Shown: positions 43,648 through 46,814 of the stretch, in pieces | How the letters are laid out: each line of letters starts with the position of its first letter | Numbering within the stretch: position 1 is the first letter of the stretch | Assembly: GCF_040938485.1 (NCBI RefSeq) | Contig: NW_027271493.1 | Coordinates: 1,364,001 to 1,428,000 of the forward strand | Length of the DNA stretch: 64,000 nucleotides | Reading direction: 5' to 3' | Source: Diadema antillarum | Taxonomy: Eukaryota | The notes under the pieces: model-generated | Database searches by the model: none | What the model was told of the DNA's origin: nothing | What the model saw: only the letters and a program-made list of their open reading frames with translations | Translations under genes and position numbers: made by a program

Positions 43648-43813
43648 GTCTAACATTTAGCGTAGCTGATTGTTGAGAACCGGAAATGATGCACTGTAGC
43701 GTCTTCCCATGATGATCAGCGGAAGGAGTGAAGGTCAACACACTTTCGATGTTGTAATAAGTCTTGTAGTGATAGCAGCGATCCGTGCAGTAATAGGGTC
43801 GAGAATAGTAATA
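43648..43813 (-). CDS. Gene 2: C-terminal half of the split N-terminal Ig domain
   Basis: YYYSRPYYCTDRCYHYKTYYNIESVLTFTPSADHHGKTLQCIISGSQQSATLNVR C|gtaagt (phase 1); a possible acceptor ttacag| (phase 0) sits immediately upstream. Confidence 0.8.
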
Positions 43814-46566
43814 CTGTAAGCAGTCCGATGAAATTCTACATCATTTTGCTTTTCATGCCAATTGCCCTCACACTTACTTCATGTCAGATTCGTCGAGTGC
43901 AGTTTCTTCCCGAAAAAAATACTTCCGAAATAATTCATCTCTTGATATGTAAATAAAAATAATCTACGGTTAGAGTACGTAGTAATGTGGATTCACTATC
44001 TTGATAGAATGCAACACAAGATTATTTCTTAATATCAGATGACATTGCTGGCTAATCTTTTCTCTCTTTTTTTTTTTTCGTTTCTCTTTTATATCGACAA
44101 AGATTAATGTCGGTAATGACAGCAATAATATATTCCATTCGATACCTTGCTGTTCACATCAATCTTGCCATATCGTCGATAATAAGAATGAATAGCCGCT
44201 TACTCTACGGCCTAAAATCAGTAATTCATTTCTGAAATGATATAAAATCAGCTGAAAATGTAAGTGTGTCGAACGTTATCCATGTAGGACATTCAACGTG
44301 ATGGCTTTCGCTGTAGTGAAAAGGCAGAAAAATTCGAGCCACCCAGCGGAAGAAATTACTCTTTCCTACGTACATGCGTTGGGTGTTTATTTCCAAGACA
44401 ATCTTTAATGCATCCCACTTTGTCTGAATTCAGTTGCCTAAGCCTCCAAGTTGTAGGATGAGAATTACAATTTTTGCCGGATACACTACCGTATCAGAGG
44501 CGCCGATGAAGAGCGTAGTGTTTCTGCCACTGGCACGAGCCAATCGGTGTGAGGGGTATGTCGTGTATGTCGCCCGGTATGTTGTTCGGTTTAATCTCAC
44601 ATCCTTTGGACTAAATAAGTCAATCGTAGATTCTGCGCAAGGTAAGTTTACCTAATTCATTTAGATTTAATAACAAAGACAATGATTTGAATAGATGTGA
44701 ATTCCTCATTACTCACACCAGCAAATAAAATGGTTTATACCTTCTTATATTTCGAATTTTTGGTATCACTTGTGTTGTACAGTATATATGCCACATCTCC
44801 AATTTTACAACAAAATCTTACCTCATCTCAAGGCTAGTAATTCCTTATCTTAAAACCACAAGCATTCCTGAAACAAATCCCAGACTGGAAATACTCCAAA
44901 TGCAAGACAATCCAAGAATCTTCATTGTTAGTTTCAGGCTATCCAGTGGGGACACTCCAACCTATATTAATCAACCAGCCAAATGGGAAGAAACATTAAG
45001 GCTATTTTGCAAGATATATCTATTCGTACTGGTTTAGAAGCCAACGCTCAGTAAATTTTGAACTCGAATAATGCTATTCATTTTGCCTATATCACGACAA
45101 GCGGATTTCAGTTTCGTCTTGACGAAAATCTGTAAGTCTAAAGGCCATGCTATATACAGTAACTTAGAATGGTCTAATTTGGGCAGGTTGTCGTCTTCCA
45201 ATACTCTCAAAGCATGCCAAGTAACTATTTGGACGGAAAAGATGACATTTTCAACGTTCTATTTGGAGAAAGAATAAAACCTCTATATTCAAGATATTCT
45301 TCAAATCCTGTTCTTCATTTGACTACCATCACGCATTCACGTGTATTCAATTTTGGGGCAACTGAAGCATTTTTTTTACGTCTCACCGTTATGTGGTATC
45401 AAACTTCACTTCCGTCGGTGTGGGAACATAAACGGACAATTTGTATTTCAAAATGATGTCATCCTAACTTTTTTTTTTACGATCGTCATCAACATGGAAT
45501 AGATCTGACACGATAAGTGAAGAAATGACTCCAAGTACGACGACCTCTACCAAAATATTGTCATTTCCGTTTGGAGTGGAATAGCAGAAATATCCGGCTT
45601 TCTTGAAATAAACCAAAGCTTGTTTTCTGCAAATGGAGTGTCTGCCGCAGCTAAAGATTCATCGTACTTAACCTTAACTGTATTCTTTAAGTCGTTTAGG
45701 TAATTGCCTTGTATCTTTCTTTGTTTATCTCTTTACTCCGTCCTTCCTAGAACAACATAGAGAAGTCGATTCAACGCTTGCACTTTCTGCCTGAGGTGTT
45801 TCTAAACGCTTTTACCAACATGACCAGAAAAACAGCATATTCCTCCCCAAATGATTGTCCATGTTACTTTCAAATCTGATGATTAGTTTCATAAGACATG
45901 AGAGTCTGTGTTTTGGGGACATTTAAAACGATATCATTCCCAGGGATTGAAATACGGGGAGTTTTCTGTGGCACATGAGTTTTGCGACACAAAGGTCACT
46001 TCCGTCTTCAATGTCTGTCATGAGACTTCCTCGTTTAATAGATCTTTTGACATTGGTTGTTTGTCTAGAGGTGTGTAATAGGGCCTAGCCAGTCTCTCTG
46101 CTCTCTGTTTTGGCATTGCCCATTCATATTACTTGTTTGGTATGCTTATCAGTATTCTAATTGCTATACTTACAGCATAACCGGAAATCCATTAAATTAT
46201 TTAACTTCCAGACAGGATTATCTTTTACCAAATTCACCAATATACCAAACTTTTCATGTGTAGTCCTTGTTTGGTGCATTGTTACTTTCATCATCAAGCC
46301 CCGGTGCTGTCTCGGCACCGTATGGTTCCTGAGATTTAAAAAATGAGATTAAATCAAAATATGTCAAGGTGTTAACCATCCTTCCAGTTGTAAGACAGAT
46401 TAACTGGGCAGAAATCCATCCTAGTAGGCAGGCTTTTCTATAGAAAATTACCTGCTTACATGTCCCTCATAGCAGGTGATCTATACGTATATCAGCAGAT
46501 GAGTATCATCTTGTTCTGATTATCATACTGAGATTGCATTTCGGAACGTCATCTTATTTTTTCCGG
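43814..46566 (-). other. 2,753-bp spacer inside the split Ig domain of gene 2
   Basis: Paralog of 12058-14810, same length. Confidence 0.7.
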
Positions 46567-46814
46567 TCAGCCTAAATAATGGTGAGCGTAGGAGCGGTAT
46601 GTATCTGTAGGTCGAGCCGATTGAACATTTCCTTGGTATCCCCATCCTTTGTCTTGTCGAGCCTGATTGCTATTTGTGACCACGCCCTCAGTGATCTGGA
46701 CGCCGTCCAAGAACCAACTCGCTGTCTGTGACTCGAGCACTCCACTCTCCGTACACCGCGCAGTGACTTGGCTGTTAGCCGTCAGGGTACTTGGTACATT
46801 GACAGTCACGGCAA
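46567..46814 (-). CDS. Gene 2: N-terminal half of the split Ig domain
   Basis: ctatacag|TT GCC (phase 1); VAVTVNVPSTLTANSQVTARCTESGVLESQTASWFLDG...GYQGNVQSARPTDTYRSYAHHYLG*. Confidence 0.8.

What the first reader, a model, noticed from the sequence alone, without database searches (positions are those of the whole stretch)
43648..46814. N-terminal Ig domain split into two selected halves with no canonical splice path between them
Seen: behind an intact promoter and signal-peptide exon, the A-D strands of a C2-type Ig domain (Cys, Trp) run into a TGA, and the E-G strands (second Cys, GT donor) lie 2.75 kb downstream. The arrangement is repeated at 11892-15058. Between copies, QVTAR to TYRS carries 5 substitutions, all synonymous, and YCTDR to NVR carries 7 synonymous changes against 2 changed codons, so both frames look under purifying selection. 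I found no GT donor shared by both copies before the stop, and the nearest acceptors of the second half differ in phase between copies (ttacag| phase 0 versus catag| phase 2 or caaag| phase 1). Inference: the mature receptor may be assembled by something other than ordinary splicing, such as somatic DNA deletion or cassette assembly, non-canonical splicing, or recoding, in a locus that looks like an invertebrate immune-receptor cluster. Recent pseudogenisation with gene conversion, or a short secreted half-domain protein, are the mundane alternatives.
Basis: partly seen in the sequence, partly recalled or inferred. Interest (0 to 1): 0.88.

Follow-up and report, generated by a model that had tools for sequence, protein, structure and literature searches.

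The report
Intron-split Ig domain with hypervariable loop
A sea-urchin (Diadema) receptor gene family carries an old intron in the middle of its first immunoglobulin domain; the split is inherited and shared by all copies, not a sign of somatic assembly, but how most copies splice across it is still unclear.

Summary
On the minus strand a signal exon (47450-47396) is followed by Ig strands A-D (46814-46627), a 20-codon tail ending at TGA 46569-46567, and Ig strands E-G (43762-43648, phase-1 GT donor). The same layout lies at 15058-11892.

It is not peculiar to these two copies. All 11 copies I examined, from the window, Diadema setosum and D. antillarum, have both halves 2.4-3.4 kb apart. A distant paralog (XP_072182360.1) has an SRCR-domain exon between its halves. 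So this is an old germline intron in the D-E loop that can host a nested domain.

Both cores show strong third-codon-position bias. The tail stays in frame in all 12 copies, with seven lengths that are all multiples of three. Its tip differs three times more than the adjacent intron, so it looks like a translated hypervariable segment. An 18-nt motif, TAGGCTGACCGGAAAAAA, holds the TGA in every copy.

Copy B has TT at that GT and only a very weak shared GT. I found no RSS, terminal inverted repeats, U12 signals or donor cassettes. No transcript data could be reached, so the junction is unproven.

The scan had already noted this stretch (s1-215107, s1-215303).

The parts
47396..47450 (-). Copy B signal-peptide exon (MAVIMVMYWMSLFLVHSC + G), donor G|GTAAGA, phase 1
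   Evidence: matched in the other loci by blastn
46627..46814 (-). Copy B Ig half 1 core, strands A-D, phase-1 acceptor tatacag|
   Evidence: codon-position changes 9/8/27; JAM-A domain 2, E 0.012
46570..46626 (-). Copy B tail, about 20 codons in frame (first codon AAT 46629-46627, through NVQSARPTDTYRSYAHHYLG). Its tip is hypervariable between paralogs.
   Evidence: in frame in 12 of 12 copies, seven lengths all multiples of 3; tip 46/126 differences against 115/936 in the intron
46557..46574 (-). Conserved motif TAGGCTGACCGGAAAAAA holding the in-frame TGA (46569-46567). In copy A and in L008 a GT directly precedes it; in copy B that dinucleotide is TT.
43814..46556 (-). Spacer, an intron in the D-E loop. 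It diverges like neutral DNA between subfamilies.
45989..46006 (-). Conserved intronic island 1, core GACGGAAGTGACCTTTGT (resembles an ETS site; this reading is from memory)
45399..45416 (-). Conserved intronic island 2 with the same core, about 590 nt downstream in most copies (not matched in copy A at up to 3 mismatches)
43763..43813 (-). Copy B head (YYYSRPYYCTDRCYHYK), after acceptor ttacag| (phase 0). The last 30 nt are as conserved as exon; the rest evolves like intron.
43648..43762 (-). Copy B Ig half 2 core, strands E-G. It starts at the universal acceptor candidate acaag|AC (phase 0) and ends C|GTAAGT (phase 1).
   Evidence: codon-position changes 7/7/23
35691..40891 (-). Rest of gene B: five Ig-like exons (about 40864, 40350, 39493, 38494, 37936) and the TM exon 35837-35691
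15427..15481 (-). Copy A signal-peptide exon (MAMIIVTCWMSLFLVHSY + G)
14821..15058 (-). Copy A half 1 plus tail up to the donor TG|GTTAGG (GT at 14820-14819, phase 2). Motif at 14818-14801, TGA at 14813-14811.
11892..12061 (-). Copy A head plus half 2, from acceptor catag|G (phase 2). The universal acceptor candidate gives an exon start at 12006. Ends C|GTATGT.

Best explanation
The split is an old germline intron in the D-E loop of the N-terminal C2-type Ig domain. It belongs to a Diadema-specific multigene family with the layout signal peptide, Ig, five Ig-like domains, TM, arranged in tandem arrays.

The intron works as a domain-insertion slot: a distant paralog carries an SRCR exon inside it.

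In the window's subfamily, the exon end upstream of the intron encodes a frame-preserved, fast-evolving tail. This would form a hypervariable insert in the D-E loop.

I infer that the halves are joined by ordinary cis-splicing, at sites that are weak and have drifted between paralogs.
- Copy A can use GT 14820-14819 with AG 12063-12062 (phase 2).
- Copy B has lost that GT. It would have to use AAT|GT (exon end 46627) with ttacag| (43813) or acaag| (43762), all phase 0.
- The conserved 18-nt motif next to the donor is probably an intronic splicing or regulatory element.

Shown: the architecture, its age, selection on both halves, and the tail's frame constraint and hypervariability. Inferred: which junctions are used.
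For: - Half 1, a spacer and half 2 are present in 11 of 11 copies.
- Between subfamilies only the halves and a few short islands of the spacer stay alignable.
- Third-position bias is 27 of 44 changes in core 1 and 23 of 37 in core 2, p = 1e-4 and 3e-4.
- P0019 reads Ig A-D, then SRCR, then Ig E-G. Its SRCR donor (GACC|GTAAGT) and half-2 acceptor (aaag|GA) are canonical.
- L008 and L009 have GG|GTTAGACTGACCGG, that is, a GT at the start of the same motif.
- Copy A has TG|GTTAGG and an in-phase AG.
- The acaag|AC acceptor is in 11 of 11 copies, and it is the only AG available in L002 and L006a.
- Joining at AAT|...|ACN gives 35 residues between the Trp and strand E, close to the about 36 I estimate from memory for JAM-A domain 2; one search's alignment covers only strands A-C.
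- All other introns of the gene have strong consensus sites.
Against: - AAT|GTTCAA matches the donor consensus only at GT: -7.4 bits on my rough matrix.
- At that position L001 and L003 have GC and L006a has AC.
- The dinucleotide before the motif is GT in only 2 of 12 copies; the others have TT, TA or CA.
- If the tail is coding in the full-length form, the donor should lie at the motif, where most copies have none.
- Eight RefSeq models never include half 2.
- No transcript evidence was obtainable.
Confidence: 0.5

Rival explanations
1. Copy B, and most copies without a GT at the motif, cannot join the halves. They make only a short secreted protein (signal peptide, strands A-D, tail) that ends at the conserved TGA, or isoforms that skip half 2. 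Half 2 stays intact through recent duplication and gene conversion from a few competent copies such as the copy A type.
For: - The ORF ends at the same TGA in 12 of 12 copies.
- Three RefSeq models end there (P0001, P0020, P0002) and five splice from GTs in the tail to later exons.
- The A/B spacer has 97-100% identical patches, which suggests conversion.
- Copy B has TT where copy A has GT.
Against: - Strands A-D alone are not a foldable Ig domain (established knowledge).
- Half 2 and its phase-1 donor are intact in 11 of 11 copies with mostly synonymous change.
- Copies with and without the GT show no difference in half-2 decay.
- Copy A, the one with the good pair, has no downstream exons in the window.
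Confidence: 0.22
2. The locus makes two products. Use of a weak internal donor (AAY|GY) gives the membrane receptor with a normal-length Ig domain. Failure to splice gives a secreted form that carries the hypervariable tail and stops at the TGA. This would resemble the secreted and membrane forms of IgM heavy chain, with the motif regulating the choice.
For: - It accounts at once for the tail's frame constraint, the conserved stop and motif, the sharp fall in conservation exactly at GGA AAY|, and the coding signal that starts right after acaag|.
- GT or GC is present at that position in 10 of 11 copies.
Against: - The donor is extremely weak.
- No conserved poly(A) signal follows the motif (read).
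- The secreted form would still be a half domain.
- In L008 the donor lies at the motif, not upstream of it.
Confidence: 0.15
3. The halves are joined by a non-canonical process guided by the conserved motif: unconventional RNA splicing at non-GT boundaries, or somatic DNA joining.
For: - The 18-nt motif is invariant across paralogs whose Ig halves are only about 40% identical.
- It sits where the tail's frame constraint ends.
- It has no GT in 10 of 12 copies.
- The tail tip is hypervariable.
Against: - There are no RSS-like heptamer and nonamer pairs: 0 observed against 0.5 expected.
- There are no terminal inverted repeats, no U12 signals, no Rfam family and no stable local RNA fold, z +2.35.
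- No cassettes were found in the spacer.
- The head side shows no fixed frame relative to any conserved upstream motif (my count).
- L008 and copy A can splice normally.
Confidence: 0.07

Closest known systems
XP_072182360.1 (P0019), Diadema setosum, locus L008
   Same: It has the same N-terminal Ig domain, split at the same place. It has the same motif at the end of half 1 (TTAGACTGACCGGTAAAAA), followed by the same kind of Ig-like exons and a TM segment.
   Different: - An intact SRCR exon lies between the halves, which are 9.3 kb apart.
- The tail is only two codons long.
- A GT sits at the start of the motif.
- The halves are about 40% identical to the window's.
- The window's spacers hold no SRCR remnant.
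IgSF genes whose single Ig domains are encoded by two exons, NCAM-type (from established knowledge)
   Same: An intron lies inside one Ig domain, between the two halves of the sandwich, and both halves are needed for the fold.
   Different: Those introns have ordinary conserved GT-AG sites and no hypervariable exon ends. Here most copies lack a consensus donor.
JAM-A / CTX-family membrane-proximal C2 domain (1f97, 1nbq)
   Same: This is the best solved-structure sequence match of half 1, over strands A-C, including the SWF.DG motif.
   Different: The match is weak (E 0.012). Half 2 alone finds no Ig chain. No membership is claimed.
V(D)J or VLR-type somatic assembly
   Same: A variable segment of an immune-type Ig receptor is encoded next to a gap in a multigene cluster.
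   Different: There are no RSS, no flanking cassettes and no inverted repeats. The variation seen is germline variation between paralogs.
Secreted versus membrane IgM heavy chain (from established knowledge)
   Same: An exon extension encodes a short tailpiece and a stop, and it competes with an internal weak 5' splice site.
   Different: In IgM the tailpiece follows a complete domain and a poly(A) site follows the stop. Neither is shown here.

Membership tests
Immunoglobulin superfamily C-type domain | Cys in strand B, Trp in strand C, and Cys in strand F in a (L/Y)xC context, with profile matches across the whole domain | tested here: inconclusive
   The residues are present. Pfam C1-set positions 3-62 match half 1 (E 0.015) and C2-set_2 positions 55-85 match half 2 (E 7e-4). 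The two hits are complementary, but each is below the gathering score.
Canonical U2-type GT-AG intron | Conserved GT (or GC) donor and AG acceptor in matching phase | tested here: inconclusive
   Met in copy A (14820-19 with 12063-62, phase 2) and in L004/L005. In copy B only AAT|GT with phase-0 AGs is available. No donor position is conserved in all copies. The acaag| acceptor is conserved in 11 of 11 copies.
U12-type (minor spliceosome) intron | 5' splice site RTATCCTY and branch site TCCTTRAY near the 3' end | tested here: not met
   No match in any of the 12 copies.
RSS-guided V(D)J-like rearrangement | Heptamer CACAGTG and nonamer ACAAAAACC separated by a 12 or 23 nt spacer at the coding ends | tested here: not met
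   0 hits in 11 units, allowing 1 and 2 mismatches, against 0.5 expected from shuffles.
DNA transposon inserted in an exon | Terminal inverted repeats at the ends of the spacer, and target-site duplication | tested here: not met
   No inverted repeat pairs lie at the spacer ends. The spacer is present in every paralog and in L008.
Nested Ig-SRCR-Ig architecture (as in P0019) | An SRCR exon between the two Ig halves | tested here: not met
   tblastn at E up to 50, Pfam on island ORFs and hhalign (probability 0.15%) find no SRCR in the window-type spacers.
Somatic or germline cassette conversion (VLR or chicken-Ig style) | Donor segments resembling the variable tips lying nearby | tested here: not met
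   The longest exact matches of tail or head in the spacer are 8-11 nt, the same as for shuffled queries. Only the spacer itself was searched.

The most novel reading that the evidence does not exclude
The invariant TAGGCTGACCGGAAAAAA element marks a joining mechanism that does not use GT. This could be unconventional RNA processing or somatic DNA joining. It would fuse a hypervariable tail to the second half of the Ig domain, giving an echinoid receptor family a diversified D-E loop.
Probability: 0.07. Interest if true: 0.9.

Novelty: new variant of a known kind. Interest (0 to 1): 0.55.

Why it matters
The variable region of an Ig-type receptor family has not, to my knowledge, been described in echinoids. 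Here the most membrane-distal Ig domain carries, at its D-E loop, a segment that stays in frame yet changes three times faster than the neighbouring intron. In a paralog the same position holds a whole SRCR domain.

If the tail is part of the mature receptor, this is a germline-diversified binding loop and a natural case of domain insertion into an Ig fold.

The missing consensus donor, next to an ultraconserved motif, also gives a concrete splicing question that is cheap to test with RNA data.

Tried and rejected
- **SRCR remnant in the spacer.** A by-eye resemblance of the island peptide DGSDLC..K..C.RKL to the SRCR motif was not borne out.
- **50-nt micro-exon at island 1** (ag|ACGGAAGT...CCCC|GTATTT, phase 1 to 0). 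It would fit acaag|. But L001 has an in-frame stop, L003 a 1-nt insertion, the acceptor has no pyrimidine tract, and the peptide is poorly conserved.
- **GC-AG donor at TAG|GCTGAC.** It is phase 1, no universal phase-1 acceptor exists, and the consensus match is poor.
- **Fixed acceptor after the upstream CGGACYNCWTA motif.** Distances to TACTGC are not congruent modulo 3 (my count).
- **RSS, terminal inverted repeats, U12 signals, Rfam families, local RNA hairpin**.
- **Donor cassettes in the spacer**.
- **Stop-codon readthrough.** Further stops follow within 5-6 codons in copies A and B and about 17 in L001 (read).
- **AlphaFold model of P0019:18-250 without an alignment.** pLDDT was 33.7, so it is unusable. 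No fold search was run.
- **Transcript evidence.** Three word-index searches and one exhaustive search returned only genomic or RefSeq models. No protein of 35-112 aa contains half 2.
- **Literature.** Nothing was found on this family.

Full report
**What is there**

The window is AT-rich eukaryotic DNA containing a roughly 32 kb tandem duplication, 9633-38664 against 41441-63999, at about 80% identity. The gene lies on the minus strand.

Copy B reads as follows:
- A signal-peptide exon, 47450-47396, with donor G|GTAAGA, phase 1.
- The acceptor tatacag|, with the exon starting at 46814.
- Ig strands A-D, containing QVTARC and SWFLDG.
- An open frame that runs to TGA 46569-46567.
- About 2.75 kb downstream, strands E-G (SVLTFTPSADHHGKTLQC...NVR), ending at 43648 before GTAAGT, phase 1.

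Copy A repeats this layout at 15058-11892.

Pfam places half 1 on positions 3-62 of C1-set and half 2 on positions 55-85 of C2-set_2. The two hits are complementary, but both are below threshold. The nearest solved sequence for half 1 is JAM-A domain 2, at E 0.012.

**Which organism and gene**

Half 1 finds RefSeq models of Diadema antillarum and D. setosum at 83-89% identity. These models have the layout signal peptide, half 1, four to five divergent Ig-like domains (pattern C...Y.I...C.G.N..GS....YCP), TM and a short tail.

In the window, gene B continues with such exons at about 40864, 40350, 39493, 38494 and 37936. Its TM exon is at 35837-35691. Copy A has no such exons in the 11.9 kb downstream. 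It looks like a truncated duplicate at the edge of the array.

**The split is a family trait**

I fetched the loci behind six RefSeq models and located both halves by blastn. All 11 copies have half 1 followed by half 2 at 2.4-3.4 kb. These are window copies A and B, one D. antillarum locus and eight D. setosum copies.

Between subfamilies the spacer has diverged beyond alignment, apart from a few short islands and, in the L006 copies, some longer stretches at 65-70% identity. The halves stay 86-92% identical between subfamilies, and more between close relatives.

Minimum changes by codon position are 9/8/27 in core half 1 and 7/7/23 in core half 2. The binomial p values are 1e-4 and 3e-4.

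This excludes a recent disruption. It also shows that both halves are translated in the stated frames.

**A paralog shows what the gap is**

XP_072182360.1 (P0019, another chromosome) reads Ig A-D, then a complete SRCR domain, then Ig E-G, then the Ig-like domains. At its locus the SRCR exon lies between the halves, which are 9.3 kb apart.

The SRCR donor is GACC|GTAAGT and the half-2 acceptor is tgtaaag|GA. Both are canonical and phase 1.

So the gap is an intron in the D-E loop that can host a nested domain. The window-type spacers contain no detectable SRCR remnant.

**The anomaly that remains**

*A conserved motif at the 5' boundary.* At the end of half 1 every copy has the motif TAGGCTGACCGGAAAAAA, which contains the TGA. 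L008 has TTAGACTGACCGGTAAAAA. So does a TARA metagenome scaffold that carries its likely orthologue from a related sea urchin.

*Where the GT is.* In L008, L009 and copy A a GT directly precedes the motif: GG|GTTAGAC and TG|GTTAGG. This is the likely ancestral donor, phase 2. In the other copies that dinucleotide is TT (copy B, L004/L005, L007a), TA or CA.

*The tail is frame-constrained.* The tail between GYQG and the TGA has seven different lengths: 60, 48, 39, 51, 42, 63 and 6 nt. All are multiples of three and none contains a stop.

*The tail tip is hypervariable.* Across six close paralog pairs, the seven-codon tip differs at 46 of 126 sites. The adjacent intron differs at 115 of 936 sites and the core at 21 of 522. 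The pairs are not independent, but the pattern holds in each. The tail therefore behaves like a translated, hypervariable segment.

*The half-2 side.* The last 30 nt before TYYN (YCxxRCYHYK) are as conserved as exon, at 9 of 180 sites. Further upstream the sequence evolves like intron, and its length is not frame-preserving. The only AG common to all copies is acaag|AC, phase 0. In L002 and L006a it is the only AG available at all.

**Possible splice paths**

- **Copy A.** The exon ends at 14821, with GT at 14820-14819, and AG at 12063-12062 gives an exon start at 12061. Both are phase 2. The product is in frame and includes the whole tail and head.
- **L004/L005.** These have a comparable phase-1 pair.
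- **Copy B.** The only option is AAT|GT (exon end 46627, phase 0), paired with ttacag| (43813) or acaag| (43762).
  - That GT is shared by 8 of 11 copies, is GC in two and AC in one. It matches no other consensus position.
  - Joining it to 43762 would give a C2 domain of normal length.
- **RefSeq models.** They either stop at the TGA or jump from GTs in the tail to later exons. None includes half 2. This is what a predictor limited to canonical sites would do.

**Tests of exotic mechanisms**

- No RSS-like heptamer and nonamer pairs.
- No inverted repeats at the spacer ends.
- No U12 signals.
- No Rfam family.
- No stable fold around the motif, z +2.35.
- No spacer segments resembling the tail or head beyond chance.

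The spacer does hold two conserved islands with the core GACGGAAGTRAC.TTTG, at 46006 and 45416. They look like transcription-factor sites rather than exons. That reading is from memory and was not tested.

**Verdict**

The most likely account is an ordinary, ancient intron in the D-E loop of a lineage-specific Ig receptor family. It is spliced at weak sites that drift between paralogs, and it is flanked by a hypervariable coding tail.

Which junction copy B uses, or whether it is junction-defective, cannot be settled from DNA. No transcript data were reachable.

The exotic inference is not supported, but it is not fully excluded either.

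Noticed in passing
window 28935-31413 and 53923-56391 (minus strand): Each 32 kb repeat unit holds a second gene, made of three related Ig-like exons and a TM exon. 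Its 5' end was not located.
   Followed up: no
window 1-11892: Copy A has no Ig-like or TM exons downstream. Homology with copy B ends near 9633, so copy A appears to be a 5' fragment at the edge of the array.
   Followed up: partly
window 46006-45989 and 45416-45399, and the same places in most other spacers: Two conserved intronic islands share the core GACGGAAGTRAC.TTTG, about 590-600 nt apart (540 in L002). The second island was not matched in copy A. They may form an intronic enhancer.
   Followed up: partly
L008:12085-12095: The RefSeq protein reads FWG-E-VRLDGG, but this assembly version cannot give E-V at the SRCR acceptor. A 5-nt GTGAG difference between versions or haplotypes would explain it.
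   Followed up: partly
L006 (P0002): The RefSeq model XP for P0002 fuses the 3' exons of one gene to the signal exon and half 1 of the next, and it ends at the conserved TGA.
   Followed up: no
L009 (TARA_SAMEA6040077 metagenome scaffold): A marine metagenome scaffold carries Diadema-like genomic DNA with the L008-type half 1 and the motif.
   Followed up: no
window 16495-19468 and 8183-8925: There is a 1.49 kb tandem duplication at 99.5% identity with sub-repeats of about 370 nt, and a separate tandem array with shifts of about 73 nt.
   Followed up: no
window 16116-16272 and 32043-32206: Runs of N. They were left as they are.
   Followed up: no
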